Below are positions 3,301 to 63,633 of a stretch of 64,000 bases of DNA, piece after piece. The notes under the pieces were generated by a model. It was not told where the DNA came from. It saw only the letters and a program-made list of their open reading frames with translations, and did not search any database. A program made the translations under genes and the position numbers. The DNA lies in NCBI GenBank assembly GCA_965637545.1, contig OZ281494.1, positions 29,512,001-29,576,000 of the forward strand, read 5' to 3'. Origin of the DNA: Phallusia mammillata. Lineage: Eukaryota. The stretch's first letter is position 1; every line of letters starts with the position of its first letter.

Positions 3301-4731
3301 GACAAAGTATTTGTTACACGAACCAATAAAAGTTATTGTTTGGCAATGTGTTGTCAGTCAAGTCTATGTACAGCAGTAAATCTGGTTAGGCGGATAGCCT
3401 ACACAATTTGAACAGCTTCGAAGATACATTACTTTAGCCCGTTCTGATAAAGGCCTTCTTACAGTCGGCTTTGTGAAAGTAAGCAAAAACAAGTGCAAGA
3501 GTATTTTAGGCAACAAAGTTTTTTCATCATGTTCATGTTTTCTTGCAGGGCACCATCGCTGTTATCATGATCATTCCCAACACCTCAACCTTCTCAAGCC
3601 TCATCGATTACTTCACATTCGCCACATGGATTTTTCATGGTTTTACTTTTCTATCTGTGCTCGTTCTTCGATATCAAAAACCAAACTGGAAACGGCCATA
3701 CAGAGTATGCAAAACTGCCTTTTATAAATATTAATAACGTAGTGTTCAAACAACACTTGCGACAAGTTTTAGATGTTCCATTATTGCTAGTGTAAACAAC
3801 GGTATTTAAATAAATTGTGTGTGTTATAAGACGTTTTCTCCCAAAGTACAAAGAAATGGAAGACATTATCGGCAAAATACACACAGAGCTTGTTTGGTTG
3901 ATGAACCAGAATAACTTGTTTGGCATCTCAAAAATACTTCAGGTGTATTGCAATATGTTTGTTTTTTTTGTAAACGAAAGCGTTTCAACCTAAAAACAAA
4001 GCAGTATATAGGATGTAAGGCAGGCAAACAGATTGAAAAGCCATGATCTACACAATTTTCTTTCAGGTGTTTCTTCCAATCCCGGTCATCTGTTTTCTCG
4101 CATCTCTATATCTCATCGTTGCTCCCATTCTAGAAGATCCAGCTATTGAATATCTCTATGCAGCAATCTTCATTCTAGCAGGACTTACATTTTATATTCC
4201 CTTTGTGCATTTCAAGATTGTTCCGACGTTTATGGGTAAAATAGCGGTTTACTCTGCTTTGTCAGACTGAACTACTGATTTTCGTTGACTACATGACCAT
4301 ACAAAATGTTCGTCACTATAAGTATTTAACCTTCTGTTGGTGCTCGAATAGTGTAGGTTTCGCTGTTTTCAACCTATCGGTAGGTTGGTTATGGCTCATG
4401 ATACCTCAATGTTAAGACAAATCCCCACATCGAATTTCAGTGTTACCTAGGCTAACCATTTTTTCACCACCGAAAAGGAAGACACATTGTTAAAAAGAAC
4501 ATTGTCCACTAAACATTACTTGTTTTTTCGTAAAAAATGAGGACATGTCATCAAAAAAGGGGACGTATGATGGGCCTTTTGTTAACACATTAACCTAATT
4601 TGTTTTCCTGCAAAACAGGTCCATTGACAATATATTTGCAAGAGTTACTGGAAGTTGTGCCACCTCCGGAAGACGAATTGATGCTTGATGGTGAAGTGGA
4701 GGAAGAATTGGAAAAGTCACATGCATTCTGA
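335..4731 (+). CDS. SLC7A9: b(0,+)-type amino acid transporter 1-like (SLC7 light chain), copy A, 5'-partial
   Basis: GT-AG exons 335-577, 852-1077, 1189-1233, 1716-1839, 2490-2593, 3028-3124, 3549-3704, 4067-4235, 4619-4731 (TGA). Motifs: [18 protein letters not shown] (heavy-chain disulfide Cys loop), [12 protein letters not shown] (TM6 with the b0,+AT-type Asp), C-terminal EVVPP. The first two coding exons lie before the window. The symbol means SLC7A9-like co-ortholog. Confidence 0.9.
1378..1545 (+). mobile_element. Truncated MITE-like repeat (CAGTGGTGGGATTCAGCCGGTTCGCACCGGTT end)
   Basis: Starts with a CAG-type terminal motif. A clearly related copy lies on the minus strand at ~17960-18117. 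No second TIR or TSD seen; right boundary approximate. Confidence 0.55.
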
Positions 4732-56817: not shown

Positions 56818-57394
56818 CAGTAGGGTATGGTGTTAGATCTACTCAAGTCAGCGAGGGTTGGTGATAGTGTAACGTGAACCGGTGTTCACTTAGTTTAGTT
56901 TATTCACTGTGTTCACTTAGTTTGGTATATGCTTATTTATTATTTAATTATTGCACTTGCTTTTCACTGTAACTTGATGTACCTATTAATATATTAGTTG
57001 TTTTGTTTCATAATGTTTGTTTGTTTTGTTTAGCCATATTTATTTTCACGTTATTCCTTTCACTTCTTGTTTTTCCACATTCGTTTTCTTGTGTTCCATT
57101 TTCACCCCTTTTCACTTTAATATCTTTATTTGTACGTTTACACCGGTAACATTTCGAACGCATCCCCGCTTCAGTGATTTCCCGCGGCGCATTGTGATTG
57201 GTCACATTCCTAGAGGCATGTGACGTCGTTTCTCCTTGTGTTTGGTGTGGCAGTTCTCTCCTGGCCCCGGTGAAGTGTGCGCGGTTGTTTTGGTGCTGTT
57301 ATTGTGTTTTGCTATAGTGCAACGTGGTTATTGCTGTGACGTAACGTGATCGAACACTACCTTTCACCTTTCAACACTGTAAATGATATTGGGT

Positions 57395-57640
57395 TGTTTT
57401 TACCCAAAGTAATTGGGTAGCTTGTTGGGTACCTTCGTTGGTAAACCCAAAATGCTGTTTGGGTTCCTTTAACCCAAATGCTTTGGGTCATCTACACGCA
57501 AACTTATTGGGTAATAAACACCTAAAATTATTTGGTAATAAACACCCAAACTTATTGGGTAATAAACACCCAAACTTATAGGGTAAAAAACACCCAAACT
57601 TATTGGGTACTAAATACCCAAACATTTAGGTAAAACCTCA
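57395..57640. repeat. Left subterminal array: ~24-bp unit CACCCAAACTTATTGGGTAATAAA (about 6 copies from ~57495) plus dispersed ACCCAA-N5-TTGGGT palindromes
   Basis: Read directly from the sequence. Confidence 0.85.
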
Positions 57641-57900
57641 CTGCACCCAACCACGTAAAAATCCAAGCCTTAAAATGTTCACACATTGATGTCAAAAATA
57701 CTTTTATTGTCTCATGACAATGCAATGACAAGAATGAAGTTGCCTAAACCAAAGTAACCCAGACTGGCAAGAAACACGTTTTTATACAAACAATACAGTA
57801 TATACACAATCATGCACCGTATTAATAATGTGCAGCAAATAAGAATACTTGATTCAGGTATTCAATTTGATTCAGGTATTCAAATGTAAATGAGTGAATG

Positions 57901-60209
57901 TCAAAATTCCAACTTCATTGCCAGCTCTTTAACAGAGTCAACAATCGGTGGCTTTTTTATCTCAAGCCAAAAATATTGAACAAACTGCAGGGCCTTGCGC
58001 ACATGGGGGCAGTATTCATAGTTAATTGCATAATAATAAGACAGAAGGGCAACAACACCCTGCACAATCGAGTCTACCTGCATTACAATGTTCTTTTCCG
58101 ACATTAGGCAGATTTTTTGAATTTTTACAAGTGTCCCAAATAAAATAAGAACTGGTTGGTGGCGGTCTGGTAATTCATTTTTTACGTCCTCATAGGTTGT
58201 ATAGGTCTGCAAGTACAAAGAGTTATGTAGATGCATCAAAGACACTATGTTAGAATATAGTAAGTTCATTAAAAAAATAATTTATTGTCATTTTACCGGA
58301 TAAAGGTCCAGAAGATATCTCTCCAAGCCAAAGTGTTTCTTTGTCTTATTTGGCAAAAGGTTAGTTAAAAGCCACAACCCAATAACAAGTTTCCAGTCTG
58401 TTGGCAAAAATAACGAATATATATTATTTTTAGATCACATTTACATATGTCTAAAAATATGGTAGACTTACCCTGGTTGGTGTTGTCTTCCTCAATAGAA
58501 ATCTGTTTCAATATTCTTTCAAGTTTGGACCCAGTTTGGACTTTCTGTACATAAGCAATTACTTTGTCAAACAAAATTTCCCCATTTGTCTGCAGTTTGT
58601 CCAAGGTTGGATTAATTTGTTGAATTCTGTTCATTTCCCTTAATAGCTGCAAACAAAACAAGCCAACAATAGCACACACATACAACTGAATAGTGGCAAA
58701 ATTAAACAACTATTTTAACAAACATATAAATTCTGTATTAAGACAAAGCAACCATAGATAAATAAAAAATCTTACTTCATTAAATGTAGATATTGCAGGC
58801 CACTCCTTTGTCATTGTCTGTGGTGTAGGTTTGTTATCTGCTATGTACTTTTGTCGGAAGTAAAATGTTTGTGCCATTAACTCTGAAATTTTTTGTTTGT
58901 TTCGGAGAATGATTGGTTTCATAAATTCTTGCTTCAGGTTCTGAATAAATGTTATTTTAAAAAGTATTTTCATGAGAAACATGCATGATTATAAAATATG
59001 ATATTCCACAGTAAAACAGAATTATGTGGTATGGCATGTATTTATTGTAAGTAGCACCTAAAACAAGGCATGATGTTTAACACACCTATGTTACACAAAA
59101 TAAATATGAATAAATAAAGTGGTTTTGTTCAAACACAAACAAACCATTTGGTGTTGTTCCATTAAAGAATTCTCCTCCATGTGACTTTCAAATGTATTGG
59201 AAACCTTTCGGCATTTAGCAACTGATGTATTAGCAAGCCCTGACAAGTTGTTGCTAACTCTTTTGGATGGCGTTTTTTCCTTTTGTGACTTTCTGATTTG
59301 TTTTAGTTGCGTATTCAATTTTTGAGTAATTTTGTGCAACCAGAAGATCTGAAGAACAAACTGATTAGTAATATTCTATAGCTTTATTTTACACATACAT
59401 CAGTAGGTTACAGTTATATCAAATGTGAACAGCTACCTTGGCTTCTTCATCACTTAAACCCAGTGAAGCTTTTCCAAGTGACACTAAAGCTGAAACTGCT
59501 GCTCTTCTCAAAAGTCTACCAGGATGGCTGGTTAAAATGAACAAAAGTTTTAACTAAATACAATGTTTCACACTAACAAACAGAATACAGGTACTTTTCA
59601 TAATTTTTCATTACTCTAATCATCTCAGAGGTTATTTCTCTTTTTCCCTTGTCAGTAAGTGAACCTGTATTTATCAACATTTTTGCATGATAACCAAATT
59701 GACAGGATTTTATAGGAAATGATTTTGGAATTGGATGGGTTGCATTTTCAAAACTTGGACCAGCGAGCTCAGACTCATTTCCAATTGACAAACTATCACT
59801 ACAATCCTCAGATATGACCGTAGGTATACTATTTGGTGTAGATGTTGAAATAAATGAAAAAGAGTCATCAGACGTCACAGGCAGGGTGTCATCCGACTCA
59901 CAAAACTCATCTTTGCTTGTGTTGAATTCTCTAATGGCACCAAAGAGTTTGAGAGTGTGCCCAAAAGGCACACCTGGCAAAATTTTTGTTAGAGTGTCAA
60001 AATTATTGACACATTTTAAAGCCGACGAGTCGATTTTGTTATCTGCAGAAAAAAACTTACAGCTAGAAAAATAACACACTTTTGCATCATCGAAGTTACA
60101 ACTTGTACATACCACTAAACTCCTTACAAATTTTTTCCAAATCATTCTCTGGGATTTCATGTAAAGTATCTCGAACCAAATTGATGACAATGTCTACAGA
60201 CGAATTCAT
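57901..60209 (-). CDS. Transposon-borne SAM-domain protein (SAMD3-like), 8 exons, 528 aa, intact
   Basis: Exons (minus) 60209-60113, 60042-59595, 59527-59437, 59348-59145, 58940-58776, 58646-58472, 58397-58297, 58206-57901. Total 1587 nt, all GT-AG and phase-consistent, no stops. SAM-like FSDNKIDSSALKCV...LPGVPFGHTLKLFGAIREF; LMAQTFYFRQKYI...KEWPAI; ALLSYYYAINYEYC...LQFVQ. Confidence 0.85.
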
Positions 60210-60647
60210 TGTTTCTTCAAACACGTTGCTGGATATTATCACACGTGAACTGAACTTAATAAAGTCAACGTTCGACTGACGTTTCGGGCAAATTCCCGCC
60301 AATCACTAGATGACGCCAAAAGAGCGCAAAATTTAAAACAAATTGTGAAGCTATCTTTTCACAAGTTAAAACATCGTATTACCATAAAACCTAATTATTA
60401 TTGTTATGTATTTTTCATCACAAATCACACAAAAAACTAAAAAAATTTTTTTAATCATTATTTTTTTTAAATTACCGCAACAAAAAATCCTGTTATCGGT
60501 AATTGCATCCAGAGGACCGTTTTTTTGGTCAAAAATATGAAGTTACGCATTTTAATTACGAACACATACAACATTGCAAACATGCAAATTACCCCATTTT
60601 GGGTAAATGTGCAACTCACCCATTCCAACACAGAAGTCTTATAACCT

Positions 60648-60959
60648 TTTTGGGTAAAATAAGAATTAACCCATTTTACCGTAAAGGGTGATTCTCATGT
60701 TTTGGGTAAAAATGTTACCAACCCAAAATGCTTCATGGGTATATATCATGAATTGGGTGGGAAGATAATCTACCCTAAATAAATTTGGGTATGCTTTTTT
60801 ATATTTTGGGTAAAATAAGAATTAACCCATTTTACCGTAAAGGGTGATTCTCATGTTTTGGGTAAAAATGTTACCAACCCAAAATGCTTCATGGGTATAT
60901 ATCATGAATTGGGTAGGAAGATAATCTACCCTAAATAAATTTGGGTAAGCGTTTTTGAT
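60648..60959. repeat. Right subterminal 156-bp tandem duplication
   Basis: GGGTAAAATAAG at 60652 and 60808; AAATTTGGGT at 60781 and 60937 (period 156). Confidence 0.9.
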
Positions 60960-61284
60960 ATTTTGGGTAAAACAAGTTTTATGCCAATGTCGTTTTGGGT
61001 TATTATAGCTATTACCCAAAATGTTGCGAGTTTTTTACCCAAAATAATTTACAGTGAAAGGTTTTATTAATTACAATATATATTATTTTTGGCCAGTAGC
61101 GAAGTCACCGTTGTAACAATTGGTTTTAGCGATAAGCCGTTAGTGCAGGGTCTTGGACCGTTTTACGAATTAGGGAGGTAGCCTCGAATACAATCGGGAT
61201 AGTTGGAAAGGTTTAGCGTTAAAGATCTCGCACCCAAACATCTTTCTGTAAATTTCGAGGTTACCAAAATAATTCCGTAACAGT

Positions 61285-61301
61285 TGGCGAACACGCCAGG
61301 A
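61285..61301 (+). other. Primer-binding site (tRNA-Arg-like)
   Basis: TGGCGAACACGCCAGGA directly after the LTR end CA. 14/17 match to the complement of the vertebrate tRNA-Arg(ACG) 3' end as I recall it (TGGCGAGCCAGCCAGGA). Confidence 0.7.
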
Positions 61302-61403
61302 CCCTGCTATCGCGAGACGGTGACTTTTCTATAGAGAGAACTCCCATTTTTACACTATTTTTACAAGAACTTTTACAGCATACTGTTGTTTTTATTATTT
61401 TAA

Positions 61404-62213
61404 ATGGCTTTTAACTTTTTATTGCCTCCGCCTCGGTATGAGCCGGGAACGGATTTGCAAGATTTTATTAGGGTGTTTGAATCGTACGCCAACAGCATTA
61501 AGGCTACTGAAGAGGTAAAACGGCACCTGTTCTTGTCTACTATTGATGACGAGCTCCGCTGGATAATACAAGGCAAGGACCGTTCTGTATACAACCTGGA
61601 TTACTCAGTCATTGTCGATCGCGCTCTAAAGAACAGTACCGGCGGCGCTTACTTGCATAAACTGCGCCATCGATTGATTACACGTCGGGAGATGCCTCGC
61701 GAAACGCCTCGAGAATTTGTGCGTGCAATCAAGGAGCTGGGAGACAAAGCGTACCCCGAGGAAAACGAAGAAGACATCAAGAGAGAAGTAATGTACACTG
61801 TGTTGTTGTCTGGACTATTAGATCAAAACCTTGCCGCTAATATTTCGAATAGATTGAACCATAAGCGTGACTTTTGGGCCGCTGCCGAGTTGGTTTTAAA
61901 CGAACAATTCACGGCCATTGTCGCAACAGTCACTACGTCCGTAGATGACAAACGCGATTTTGACAATACTGTAATTACTACCCTGATTGAGCTGAAGCAG
62001 GGTTTACACAAAAACACAGAGCATTTAACAAGCACTGTTGCGAGTTTGCAAGCCCAGTGCGAGAATCTGCAGCAACAGGTTCGGACGCTGGCGTTGGCTC
62101 AACGTCGTACCGATGTGCGCCCTTCCCGACCCTTAAATCAGCGAAGGTGTTTCAGCTGTGGAGAGGCCGGTCATCTCCAACACCAGTGTCGACGTGAGCA
62201 ACCTCTAGACTGA
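61404..62213 (+). CDS. gag: Ty3/Gypsy Gag protein, 269 aa, intact ORF
   Basis: Capsid-like region (ETPREFVRAIKELGDKAYP) and C-terminal CCHC knuckle CFSCGEAGHLQHQC, 102 nt downstream of the PBS. Confidence 0.9.
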   Translation: MAFNFLLPPPRYEPGTDLQDFIRVFESYANSIKATEEVKRHLFLSTIDDELRWIIQGKDRSVYNLDYSVIVDRALKNSTGGAYLHKLRHRLITRREMPRETPREFVRAIKELGDKAYPEENEEDIKREVMYTVLLSGLLDQNLAANISNRLNHKRDFWAAAELVLNEQFTAIVATVTTSVDDKRDFDNTVITTLIELKQGLHKNTEHLTSTVASLQAQCENLQQQVRTLALAQRRTDVRPSRPLNQRRCFSCGEAGHLQHQCRREQPLD

Positions 62214-62242
62214 CCCCCACAAAATCGATGATGACTACCAAA

Positions 62243-62298
62243 CGACTCCCCGACCCTCCGACCCTCCGACCCTCCGACCCTCCGACCCTCCGACCGTC
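62243..62298. repeat. 8-bp tandem repeat (CGACCCTC) x7 at the gag-pol junction
   Basis: Five perfect units flanked by CGACTCCC and CGACCGTC. Confidence 0.9.
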
Positions 62299-62310
62299 CG
62301 CCGGTAGCAA

Positions 62311-63633
62311 GTGTTACCGCGATTTGTTGAGATTGTGACCGAAAACGTGCCGGTATGTGCTTTAGTAGACACGGGGGCAACTGTATCTTTGTTATCCGAA
62401 CACCTGTGGCGAAAACTTTCAAACGTTGGTAATATGAACCTAGAGTCGTGTCCAACCAATTTTGGCCTGGTCGCTGCAAACGGCACGCAGTTGAATTCTC
62501 TTGGGATAGCTAAAGTAAACATTAAAGTTGGTGGACTAACTGTGAGCCACCGATTCTATGTATGCAACCACTCCGCGCATGAGTGCATCATAGGCCTAGA
62601 CTTCTTGAAAAAGTATAACTGCTCTCTTTGCTATAAGACCGCACTGATGACCGCCGGGAAAGCAAGGGTGCCTTTGCTGAACCAGTCCCTTATTCCTGAA
62701 GAAAAGGAAGTCTTTCTAGCGGAACTGACCCGAGTCCCTGCATCAACGGAGGTGCAAGTGATGGGAGAGTTTCCCCCCGACCGCAATGACTTCCGAACCT
62801 GAGCAAGTTTCCAGCGTCACACACAAAGCAGAGGACGGCCAGGCTGATGAACATTGGCGAAATATAGTCTCCGGGGAGACGCTCGACCAGTGCGCCAAGC
62901 TCCTAGGAGGATGCCGCAACGTCACAAGCATAAAGTTGAAGAGATCATCGACGAAATGCGCAAACAAGGTTTAGTCCGTCCGTCAACGTCTCCCTGGTCG
63001 AGTTCAATTGTTCTTGTGAAGAAAAAGTCAGGATGGAAAGCACTGGGATGAGGCTTTGTCAGCGGTGGTAGCATCATACAATTCCAGTCGGCATGAAAGC
63101 ACTGGCTTCGCTCCCCACTACTTGCTTACAGGGTCTCCTTTGCGTCTGCCCGCTGACCTGATACATGCGCCCTCGCCGCACGACCAGCAGTCGCCTTTGG
63201 TCCATCTGGAAGGACTCCGAGATCGGCTGGCACTTGCCAGGGAAGTGGCACGCGAGACCCTCCAGTGTCAGCGCAAGTAAATAGAGAAGCAATATAACAA
63301 TAGTAGAGAAGCAAGGACCTGTCAACTACAAAATTGTTGATCAAACCGGCAAAACCCAAGTAGTGCACTTCAATCGCTTGAAGAAAACATCGGCCAATTT
63401 TGATGAGCACAACGATGGAGATGAGATTGTTGCGAAGCGTCGTGAAGAAGATGTAGCTTTACGTGAACAAGCACGTGGTTCCGACAAGCCGTTACCAACT
63501 GTTGTTGTCCAGGTGATGGTCCCGAGCACCGAAGACGATTCAGGAAAACGCGGCTCCAAACGACCCCTATGCGACAACGGGTCTGGTTTGTCCGCGGACG
63601 TGCAGATTATGAGCGACGTGTTGGAAACTAGAC
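62311..63633 (+). pseudogene. pol: Internally deleted Gypsy pol: aspartic protease, RT N-terminus, integrase C-terminus
   Basis: ALVDTGATVSLL (protease). RPVRQAPRR...STSPWSSSIVLVKKKSG is joined out of frame at ~63031 to KHWDEALSAVVASYNSSRHESTGFAP (integrase), then VNYKI...VVHFNRLK. RT core, RNase H and most of the integrase DDE core are missing; stops present. Confidence 0.9.

What the first reader, a model, noticed from the sequence alone, without database searches (positions are those of the whole stretch)
57375..61056. Transposase-less CACTA-like transposon carrying an intact 8-exon SAM-domain (SAMD3-like) gene
Seen: 20-bp TIRs starting CACTG, a 2-bp TSD, arrays of ACCCAA/TTGGGT at both ends, and one cargo gene filling the interior. 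It has 8 exons, 7 canonical introns, 528 codons and no lesion, with an N-terminal SAM-like domain, a Ser/Asp-rich linker and a helical C-terminal region. Known: plant En/Spm encodes a second protein (TnpA) that binds subterminal repeats and regulates transposition and methylation; SAM domains oligomerise; vertebrates have a poorly understood SAMD3 gene. Inference: this is the animal CACTA accessory gene, here mobile on its own as a helper, regulator or anti-silencing module, and the family may be the source of host SAMD3-like genes. My SAMD3 assignment comes from motif recognition, not a search.
Basis: partly seen in the sequence, partly recalled or inferred. Interest (0 to 1): 0.75.

Follow-up and report, generated by a model that had tools for sequence, protein, structure and literature searches.

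The report
Transposon carrying its own SAM-domain helper gene
This is a real, recently moved DNA transposon of a sea squirt that has lost its transposase gene but kept an expressed second gene, which full-length relatives carry next to a CACTA-type transposase; the gene looks like the family's own accessory protein and distantly resembles vertebrate SAMD3.

Summary
Window 57375-61056 is a 3,682-bp DNA transposon with 20-nt CACTG inverted ends, a 2-bp target duplication and roughly 50-fold enriched TTGGGT/ACCCAA arrays at both ends. Other copies in the genome end at exactly the same bases, and related copies of the host repeat show the empty site. The genome is an ascidian, apparently Phallusia mammillata.

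The minus-strand gene has 8 exons and 528 codons. RNA-derived contigs from three studies carry all 7 splice junctions.

The element is a deletion derivative. A 6.8-kb relative (87% identical) and a second family of 7.4 kb carry the same gene back-to-back with a C2H2 transposase of the CACTA type (Transposase_21/DUF4218). Ciona intestinalis has the same two-gene layout. Weak but above-control matches to the gene lie beside related transposases in a tick, a killifish and two metagenome contigs.

Between lineages the gene is under purifying selection (dN/dS 0.24). Young copies decay neutrally.

The N-terminus folds as a SAM domain in a predicted model, but no Pfam SAM model matches. The SAMD3 link rests only on language-model features and modest structural similarity (TM 0.45-0.56).

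A TnpA-like function, binding the end repeats and oligomerising, is inferred and not shown.

The scan noted a third, 3,450-bp sister family elsewhere in this genome (s1-411019).

The parts
57373..57374 (.). Left copy of the 2-bp target-site duplication (AA)
   Evidence: The empty paralogous sites read ...CCTTTCAAAGGTTTT, which fits a 2-bp AA duplication. Other family-1 copies have CA, CA, TA and TA.
57375..57394 (+). Left terminal inverted repeat, starting CACTG
   Evidence: Inverted repeat I9 is 20 nt with 90% complementarity. The same terminus is found in all other copies.
57395..57640 (.). Left subterminal array of TTGGGT/ACCCAA, with 24-bp units at 57448-57639, each an ACCCAA-N5-TTGGGT palindrome
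   Evidence: Direct-repeat family D1 has six copies at 24-bp spacing. There are 15 hexamers in the left 270 bp against 2 in the interior.
57765..57900 (-). 3' untranslated region as far as the RNA contig reaches
   Evidence: The X1 contig ends at 57765. This stretch contains a variable 17-18-nt tandem repeat at 57849-57883.
57901..58206 (-). Exon 8 (101 codons plus the stop codon)
   Evidence: The junction 58206|58297 is seen in X1, X5 and X15.
58297..58397 (-). Exon 7
   Evidence: The junctions 58206|58297 and 58397|58472 are seen in RNA contigs.
58472..58646 (-). Exon 6
58776..58940 (-). Exon 5
59145..59348 (-). Exon 4
59437..59527 (-). Exon 3
59595..60042 (-). Exon 2: second half of the SAM-like domain, the acidic Ser/Asp linker and the start of the conserved helical domain. 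The last base (59595) is a change private to this copy.
   Evidence: The transcripts and six other copies have G where this copy has A on the coding strand.
60113..60209 (-). Exon 1 (ATG at 60209-60207; first half of the SAM-like domain)
   Evidence: The junction 60042|60113 is seen in X1 and X15, and the X1 contig starts at 60239.
60210..60560 (.). Upstream region shared with the 6.8-kb relative. In that relative it lies between the divergent accessory and transposase genes, so it is presumably a promoter region.
   Evidence: DNA similarity to L018 runs up to query base 3386, which is window 60560. The L018 transposase reading frame starts about 45 bp further on.
60561..60803 (.). Site where the 3.3-kb transposase unit of the longer relative is missing; partly filled by one unit of a 156-bp tandem duplication (60648-60803 / 60804-60959)
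   Evidence: L018 holds C2H2 and transposase exons here.
60590..61036 (.). Right subterminal array of TTGGGT/ACCCAA (52- and 156-bp periods)
   Evidence: Direct-repeat families D2-D4. There are 15 hexamers in the right 480 bp.
61037..61056 (-). Right terminal inverted repeat, ending CAGTG
61057..61058 (.). Right copy of the target-site duplication (AA)

Best explanation
Shown: window 57375-61056 is a young, non-autonomous internal-deletion derivative of a two-gene DNA transposon of the CMC (CACTA/Mirage/Chapaev) superfamily in an ascidian genome. The full element has CACTG ends, 2-bp target duplications and TTGGGT/ACCCAA arrays at both ends. It carries two divergently transcribed, intron-containing genes. 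One encodes a C2H2 zinc-finger DDE transposase of the Transposase_21/DUF4218 kind. The other encodes a 528-residue protein with an N-terminal SAM-fold domain, an acidic linker, a conserved helical domain, a basic patch and a C-terminal alpha/beta domain. The window copy lost exactly the transposase unit and kept the second gene, its upstream region and both ends. It must therefore be moved in trans, by the 6.8-kb relative on C1 or by a related family. The second gene is spliced and expressed at the family level and was under purifying selection along the lineages that stayed active.

Inferred (about 40% likely in this specific form): the protein is the functional counterpart of maize TnpA. Its conserved helical domain would bind the palindromic ACCCAA-N5-TTGGGT units. 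Its SAM domain would oligomerise, bringing the two ends together or controlling the element's promoter. Accessory-only copies would then add to the trans-acting pool.
For: Element and mobility:
- The ends are exact and shared by the other copies, target duplications are 2 bp, and an empty site exists.
- End hexamers are about 50-fold enriched.
- A near-identical second copy has 4 differences in 3,682 bp.

Two-gene relatives:
- L018 (6,792 bp, same ends) has C2H2 plus transposase exons in place of window 60561-60803.
- Family 2 (7,389 bp, three copies about 100% identical, TSDs TA/TA/CA) pairs the two genes divergently at seven genomic places.
- Its transposase exons align colinearly with proteins that hit PF02992 and PF13960.

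Depth of the association:
- Ciona intestinalis has the same layout, with a CACTCAG...TTGGGT end.
- Intron positions are conserved across three families and Ciona.
- Profile matches of 15-35 bits lie beside related transposases in a tick, a killifish and two metagenome contigs. The best hit in 57 kb of control DNA was 7.7 bits.

Expression and selection:
- All 7 junctions are present in contigs of three studies. They are absent from a run that holds the introns.
- dN/dS is 0.24 between the window copy and L018, at dS 0.21.

SAM fold:
- The model has pLDDT 80, and nearly all top PDB matches (about 30 of the listed rows) are SAM domains, with TM 0.6-0.75.
Against: - No biochemical evidence exists for DNA binding, oligomerisation or any effect on transposition.
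- Pfam SAM models do not match the protein.
- The conserved helical domain has no significant structural match; Z is 5 or less.
- Young copies evolve neutrally and several are broken, so any one copy, including this one, may be inert. This copy has a private change at a splice donor.
- The transcripts seen fit other copies or alleles better than the window copy.
- The transposase's own Pfam hits are sub-threshold (DUF4218, E 0.038), so the superfamily call is transitive.
- Matches outside ascidians are short motifs, and common transposon borders were not found there.
Confidence: 0.78

Rival explanations
1. The second gene is a transposon-encoded regulator rather than a transposition cofactor. 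It could be a repressor or dose-limiter of the transposase, or a shield against host silencing. Accessory-only copies would then tune or parasitise the autonomous elements.
For: - The gene keeps its own upstream region in the deletion derivative.
- Two independent families (family 1, 3.68 kb; family 3, 3.45 kb) produced accessory-only elements. These are the youngest and most numerous copies.
- Maize TnpA is itself both cofactor and promoter regulator, as summarised in PMC1636069.
- Several of the best structural matches to the SAM-fold model are SAM domains of Polycomb-group proteins (Scm, Ph, PHC3, L3MBTL3). This is suggestive only.
Against: Nothing tested here separates this reading from the cofactor reading. 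No small-RNA, chromatin or dosage data were examined.
Confidence: 0.3
2. The gene is a host gene (an ascidian SAMD3-like gene) that a CACTA-type element captured, as Pack-type elements capture genes. It rides along without any role in transposition.
For: - Language-model and shape searches point to SAMD3-like host proteins of chordates.
- The element here has no transposase.
- The gene has normal introns.
Against: - The gene sits in the same position and orientation beside the transposase in three divergent Phallusia lineages and in Ciona, with conserved introns.
- The two genes have diverged to a similar degree between families, about 46% versus 46-49% amino-acid identity.
- It was under purifying selection inside the transposon lineage.
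- Motif matches accompany related transposases in other phyla.
- An ancient capture at the base of this clade cannot be excluded.
Confidence: 0.1
3. It is an ordinary single-copy host gene that happens to lie between chance inverted repeats.
For: None was found.
Against: About nine family-1 copies share exact ends in unrelated flanks. The target duplications are 2 bp. An empty site exists in paralogous LTR copies.
Confidence: 0.01

Closest known systems
Maize En/Spm (CACTA) with its TnpD transposase and TnpA accessory protein, and its dSpm deletion derivatives
   Same: Both have CACT-type inverted ends, arrays of short subterminal repeats at both ends, and a transposase of the Transposase_21/DUF4218 kind. 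Both encode a second element protein. Both give rise to non-autonomous internal-deletion derivatives that are moved in trans.
   Different: - The target duplication is 2 bp here and 3 bp in plant CACTA.
- The second protein here comes from its own divergently transcribed gene, not from alternative splicing of one unit.
- It shows no Pfam match to plant TnpA-type families, and it has a SAM-fold N-terminus.
- The derivative here keeps the accessory gene intact.
- A TnpA-like function is only inferred.
Animal Transposase_21 elements (SmTRC1 of Schistosoma and relatives; DeMarco et al. 2006, PMC1636069)
   Same: These are animal elements of the CACTA superfamily with 2-bp target duplications. Homologous transposases are reported in Ciona, zebrafish, sea urchin and mosquito. 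Short non-transposase products were proposed there as TnpA analogues. Insertions into LTR retrotransposons were also seen.
   Different: That paper found a CCC end motif and second proteins with no similarity to anything in other animals. Here the ends are CACTG, and the second gene is conserved across ascidian genera and apparently beyond.
Vertebrate SAMD3 (sterile alpha motif domain-containing protein 3) and SAMD3-like clusters
   Same: Both have an N-terminal SAM-type domain followed by about 450 residues, for a total of about 520-535 aa. ESM-Atlas feature score is 0.95 for the whole protein and 0.86 for the C-terminus alone. SAMD3 clusters are the top rows of a shape search made with the SAM-less C-terminal model.
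   Different: - No sequence-level match was obtained.
- TM scores are only 0.45-0.56.
- Here the gene is multi-copy and lies inside a transposon.
- A direct profile comparison with SAMD3 could not be run, because no SAMD3 sequence was available through the tools.
Mirage/Chapaev branches of the CMC superfamily (from my own knowledge of the classification)
   Same: Both are CAC-type-ended animal DNA transposons with 2-3-bp target duplications and DDE transposases related to the CACTA type.
   Different: I did not place the transposase in a phylogeny, so the branch is not assigned. I know of no description of a conserved SAM-domain second gene in these groups, and three literature searches found none.

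Membership tests
CMC (CACTA/Mirage/Chapaev) DNA transposon, non-autonomous member | Terminal inverted repeats with a CACT-type terminus | tested here: met
   The inverted repeat is 20 nt, 18/20 complementary, starting CACTG. The same terminus is found in families 1-3; the Ciona element starts CACTC.
CMC (CACTA/Mirage/Chapaev) DNA transposon, non-autonomous member | Short target-site duplication of 2-3 bp and evidence of insertion | tested here: met
   The duplication is 2 bp in 5 of 5 family-1 copies and in 3 family-2 copies; 3 family-3 copies are flanked by TA on both sides, which cannot be told from part of the element. An empty site exists in paralogous LTR copies.
CMC (CACTA/Mirage/Chapaev) DNA transposon, non-autonomous member | Subterminal arrays of short repeats at both ends | tested here: met
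   There are 15 hexamers at each end against 2 in the interior and 0.84 per kb in the rest of the window.
CMC (CACTA/Mirage/Chapaev) DNA transposon, non-autonomous member | Autonomous relatives with the same ends encode a Transposase_21/DUF4218 DDE transposase | tested here: met
   L018 and family 2 carry the transposase. Their exons align colinearly with P0033, P0048 and P0070 (PF02992 at or near the cut-off) and with P0045 (PF13960), at E down to 1e-33. Caveat: their own Pfam hits are sub-threshold (DUF4218, E 0.038 and 0.006).
Plant-type CACTA (En/Spm) in the narrow sense | 3-bp target duplication, CACTA terminus, and TnpA made by alternative splicing of the transposase unit | tested here: not met
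   The duplication is 2 bp, the terminus is CACTG, and the accessory gene is a separate unit on the opposite strand.
SAM domain (Pfam SAM_1 / SAM_2) | Sequence match to the SAM profile models | tested here: not met
   No SAM family matched at E up to 1, either on the exons or on the 528-aa public protein P0001 and three paralogues.
SAM domain (Pfam SAM_1 / SAM_2) | Five-helix SAM fold of about 70 residues | tested here: met
   The AlphaFold model of residues 1-82 has pLDDT 79.8 and five helices. Nearly all top Foldseek PDB rows are SAM domains (Scm, Ph, Ste50, L3MBTL3, CNK2), with TM 0.6-0.75, rmsd 2-3 A and probability 0.99-1.0. E-values are only 0.09-1. The model is predicted, not solved.
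SAMD3 family | Architecture: N-terminal SAM domain plus a C-terminal region of about 450 residues, 520-535 aa in all | tested here: met
   The protein has 528 aa, a SAM fold at 1-75 and a structured region at 135-528. The SAMD3 clusters found are 491-535 aa.
SAMD3 family | Detectable sequence homology to SAMD3 proteins | tested here: inconclusive
   phmmer with exon 8 against 1.84 billion representatives gave 23 hits; the full-length ones checked are ascidian proteins and the rest are unnamed short fragments. Word-indexed searches gave 2 hits. No direct profile comparison with SAMD3 was possible.
SAMD3 family | Shared fold of the C-terminal region | tested here: inconclusive
   SAMD3 clusters are the top rows of the shape search, at TM 0.45-0.49 with my model and 0.56 with the Atlas model. 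Feature score is 0.86-0.95. Both sides are predicted models.
SAMD3 family | Single-copy host gene outside mobile elements | tested here: not met
   The gene is multi-copy and flanked by inverted ends. The genome has 25 to 48 or more exon matches.
TnpA-like transposon accessory protein (functional class) | Encoded inside the autonomous element alongside the transposase and conserved with it | tested here: met
   dN/dS is 0.24 between lineages.
TnpA-like transposon accessory protein (functional class) | Binds the subterminal repeats, and is needed for or modulates transposition | not testable with these tools
   Only circumstantial evidence exists: the repeat units are palindromic, and the conserved helical domain has weak matches, Z 5 or less, to DNA-binding folds.
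TnpA-like transposon accessory protein (functional class) | Sequence similarity to plant TnpA-type families | tested here: not met
   No Pfam family matched at E up to 1, apart from chance-level rows.

The most novel reading that the evidence does not exclude
A SAM-domain (or CIDE-N-domain) protein with this C-terminal fold may be the ancient, conserved second gene of a whole metazoan clade of CACTA-type transposons, spanning ascidians, ticks, fish and other invertebrates. Vertebrate SAMD3 and the arthropod DUF4769/SAM proteins would then be domesticated descendants of it. That would give SAMD3 an origin and a testable biochemical function: binding repeated DNA and oligomerising.
Probability: 0.3. 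Interest if true: 0.8.

Novelty: new variant of a known kind. Interest (0 to 1): 0.6.

Why it matters
Animal CACTA-type transposons are poorly understood. The one detailed study found second proteins that were not conserved between species (PMC1636069). Here a second gene is conserved in structure, position and introns across ascidian genera, is expressed, and is selected. It also survives on its own in young, transposase-less copies of two independent families.

That gives a concrete candidate for the animal counterpart of maize TnpA. It can be tested in organisms where DNA is routinely introduced into embryos (my own knowledge, not tested here).

If the remote likeness to SAMD3 holds, it would also suggest where a vertebrate gene of unknown function came from and what it might do.

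Tried and rejected
- Pfam on all eight exon translations and on four full-length family proteins gave no SAM, DUF4769 or TnpA-type hit.
- The DUF4769 model against the whole genome found nothing, and the control genomes were silent too, so this is uninformative.
- Word-indexed protein searches with P0001 and with a five-sequence profile returned only two ascidian proteins, because of the candidate cap.
- A sequence search of the PDB returned only chance rows.
- Foldseek and the wide VIA search of the PDB with the 401-residue C-terminal model gave nothing significant: probability 0.1 or less, Z 5 or less. The weak BEN, winged-helix and homeodomain rows are leads only.
- hhalign of the family profile against the 345-aa killifish ORF next to the transposase gave probability 0.6%. 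My by-eye likeness of its 'WP..F..P.F' region is therefore not supported; only the downstream motif matches.
- Pfam on the neighbouring ORFs in killifish, tick and the metagenome contigs found nothing.
- A search for common inverted ends around the tick two-gene locus found none.
- Literature searches for SAMD3 with transposon, 'SAMD3-like', and 'sterile alpha motif' with EnSpm found nothing relevant.
- I considered and rejected a 3-bp target duplication (left CAA versus right AAA) and an 8-bp one. The extra CCTTTCA to the left of the insertion is absent from the other copies' ends.

Step left out by rule: the spliced 528-residue product of the window copy was never joined or submitted to a tool. 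Exons were searched one by one by reference. The public 528-aa protein P0001, a near-identical copy, served as the full-length stand-in.


Full report
**What the sequence shows.** They are 18/20 complementary and start CACTG. The window is G000:C1:29512001-29576000 of a 240-Mb genome. A DNA search of that genome with the element plus 200 bp of flank on each side showed that similarity to other copies starts and stops exactly at these ends:
- C2:27395966-27399648 differs at only 4 of 3,682 bases.
- Copies on C198 and C4 are 96-98% identical.
- A longer copy on C1 is 87% identical.

Each copy lies in different flanking DNA, and each complete copy is bordered by a 2-bp direct repeat: AA here; CA, CA, TA and TA elsewhere.

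**The insertion site.** The flanks of the window copy are themselves a repeat. In other copies of that repeat the two flanks are contiguous and read ...CCTTTCAAAGGTTTT. That is what a 2-bp AA duplication predicts. The host repeat is the LTR of a retrotransposon. Paired copies lie 4.5-9 kb apart elsewhere. A gag ORF with a zinc knuckle and an aspartic-protease ORF follow at 61404-62802.

The hexamers TTGGGT/ACCCAA occur 15 times in the left 270 bp and 15 times in the right 480 bp. They occur twice in the 2.9-kb interior and 48 times in the other 57 kb of the window. On the left they form 24-bp units, each an ACCCAA-N5-TTGGGT palindrome.

**The gene.** On the minus strand I find eight exons:
- exon 1: 60209-60113
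- exon 2: 60042-59595
- exon 3: 59527-59437
- exon 4: 59348-59145
- exon 5: 58940-58776
- exon 6: 58646-58472
- exon 7: 58397-58297
- exon 8: 58206-57901

There are seven GT-AG introns and 1,587 coding bases, which is 528 codons plus a stop.

Contigs of public runs from three studies cover only the exons and join them at exactly these seven places. One 1,760-nt contig runs from 60239 to 57765 through all eight exons. A fourth run that holds introns and flanks, so DNA, shows none of the joints, so the spliced form is not a retrocopy. The run type 'RNA' is the tool's guess, but exon-only coverage with exact splice joints supports it.

The contigs differ from the window copy at a few bases. Expression is therefore shown for the family, not for this copy. 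This copy has three private coding changes relative to its near-twin on C2. One is G to A at the last base of exon 2 (59595). It turns Ser into Asn and weakens the donor. The transcripts and six other copies have G.

A public 528-aa protein, P0001, served as the full-length stand-in. Its source names it 'uncharacterized protein LOC104265813', Phallusia mammillata, and it is 98% identical in exon 8. The source name also suggests which organism the genome belongs to.

**It is a deletion derivative of a two-gene element.** The 6,792-bp copy on C1 (L018) has the same ends. Where the window has 60561-60803, L018 has 3.3 kb holding a C2H2 zinc-finger ORF and a series of exons that end in a 297-residue ORF. 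These lie on the strand opposite to the SAM-like gene.

A second family is about 46-48% identical in protein. It consists of 7,389-bp elements with ends CACTGAAAAAAATATTGGGT... and TSDs TA, TA and CA. Three copies are essentially identical. Across the genome, matches to the SAM-like gene and to the transposase of this family pair up divergently, 3-5 kb apart, at seven places.

The family-2 transposase exons align colinearly with ~800-aa proteins from Ciona, ticks, a sea cucumber, fish and unnamed contigs. Some of these hit Pfam Transposase_21 (tnp2) at or near its cut-off, and one hits DUF4218. The elements' own hits to DUF4218 are weak, at E 0.038 and 0.006. The superfamily call, CACTA/CMC, therefore rests on transitive homology together with the ends, the 2-bp duplication and the subterminal arrays.

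L018's transposase exons show no stop inside the conserved parts. It may be the autonomous partner.

A third family of 3,450 bp has ends CACTGCAAACC..., is flanked by TA at both ends, and has at least five copies at about 99.8% identity. It is again transposase-less with only the SAM-like gene. This is the element noted earlier by the scan as s1-411019.

**The association is old.** In Ciona intestinalis the homologue P0007 lies divergently next to a transposase homologue, of which exons a-g are present. It is followed by a dense TTGGGT/ACCCAA array and an end reading CACTCAGAAAAAAATTGGGT in reverse complement. Intron positions fall in the same alignment columns in families 1-3 and in Ciona.

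I searched a profile of five ascidian proteins against six-frame ORFs of loci that encode related transposases. It gave same-strand, colinear matches to its two most conserved motifs:
- a tick: 19.5 and 15.3 bits
- a killifish: 17.2 bits
- two metagenome contigs: 35.2 bits (E 4e-10) and 19.1 bits

The best hit in 57 kb of control DNA scored 7.7 bits. These are short motif matches. I could not define common transposon borders there, so they remain a lead.

**Selection.** Between the window copy and L018, dS is 0.21 and dN 0.05, giving dN/dS 0.24. Intron divergence is 0.11. Among copies 1-4% apart, dN/dS is 0.5-1.3, and several have stops or frameshifts. This is the usual transposon pattern: selection along lineages that stay active, and neutral decay after insertion.

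**What the protein is.** No Pfam family matches. A model of residues 1-82 (pLDDT 80) is a five-helix bundle. Nearly all of its top PDB matches are SAM domains, with TM 0.6-0.75, although the E-values are modest. The SAM-like reading therefore holds at the level of predicted fold.

The remainder was modelled at pLDDT 74 and has a confident helical domain, a basic stretch and an alpha/beta C-terminus. It has no significant match among solved structures.

In the ESM Atlas, the whole protein is nearest by features to SAM_2/DUF4769 clusters of arthropods and to 'SAMD3 isoform X2' (0.95). The C-terminal 401 residues alone still find 'SAMD3-like' (0.86). Shape searches with the SAM-less model put SAMD3 clusters on top, at TM 0.45-0.56. 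A cluster with a CIDE-N N-terminus also appears. This hints that the C-terminal module is combined with different small N-terminal domains.

A sequence-level link to SAMD3 was not obtained and could not be tested directly.

**How it most likely works.** Shown: this is a non-autonomous CMC-type transposon that moved recently and keeps the family's second gene. Inferred: it is mobilised in trans by the L018-type or a related transposase. Also inferred, at about 40% in this form: the protein acts like maize TnpA. It would recognise the palindromic subterminal units, and self-associate through the SAM domain to pair the ends or regulate the promoter.

Two independent accessory-only families are the youngest copies. 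This suggests, but does not prove, that keeping this gene helps a derivative to spread.

**Comparison with what is known.** Plant En/Spm supplies the model: a transposase plus TnpA, subterminal repeats, and deletion derivatives. DeMarco et al. 2006 (PMC1636069) described animal Transposase_21 elements with 2-bp duplications, including a Ciona hit. They also described second proteins that were not conserved between species.

The differences here are a separate, divergently transcribed, intron-rich accessory gene with a SAM fold that is conserved across genera, and derivatives that retain it. I rate it a new variant of a known kind. Three literature searches found no description of it, which is not proof of absence.

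Noticed in passing
window 57175-57366 and 61057-62802 (continuing beyond the window end): The element sits inside the LTR of an LTR retrotransposon. The flanks are a repeat found in pairs 4.5-9 kb apart elsewhere. A gag ORF with a CCHC knuckle (61404-62213) and an aspartic-protease ORF (62311-62802) follow. A second LTR copy lies about 670 bp beyond the window end.
   Followed up: partly
window 57360-57373: The left flank carries a 7-bp tandem duplication (CCTTTCA CCTTTCA) that the empty paralogous sites lack. It is not part of the element as defined by the other copies. It could be a variant of this LTR copy or a scar of an earlier event.
   Followed up: partly
L021+L029 (G000:C2:4616377-4623765), L022+L030, L023+L031: Family 2 is a 7,389-bp two-gene element present in three copies that are 99.99-100% identical over their full length. 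It is probably an active autonomous transposon.
   Followed up: partly
L026, L027, L028 (G000:C1:9439021-9442474 and others): Family 3 is a 3,450-bp accessory-only element with ends CACTGCAAACC..., flanked by TA at both ends, at about 99.8% identity. Its gene corresponds to the public mRNA-derived protein P0006.
   Followed up: partly
L037 12500-19200, L036 13300-14400, L039 10200-14100, L041 8300-8700: Motif-level matches to the accessory protein lie downstream, on the same strand, of related transposases in Ixodes scapularis, Nothobranchius furzeri and two metagenome contigs.
   Followed up: partly
window 60648-60959: A 156-bp tandem duplication (96% identical) lies right at the place where the transposase unit was lost. 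Repair or slippage may have accompanied the deletion.
   Followed up: no
G000:C3, about 12-17 Mb: Many degenerate fragments of both the accessory gene and the transposase cluster in this part of C3. It may be a transposon-rich, possibly pericentromeric region.
   Followed up: no
L032, L033, L034 (G000:C4:7880495, C1:15143203, C3:10248415): Other families in the same genome encode intronless ~800-aa C2H2 transposases that are 25-31% identical to the one studied. Weak accessory-motif hits lie nearby in L033 and L034.
   Followed up: partly
window 57849-57883: A perfect 17-nt tandem repeat (18-nt period) in the 3' untranslated region varies in sequence and length between the RNA contigs of different runs.
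   Followed up: no
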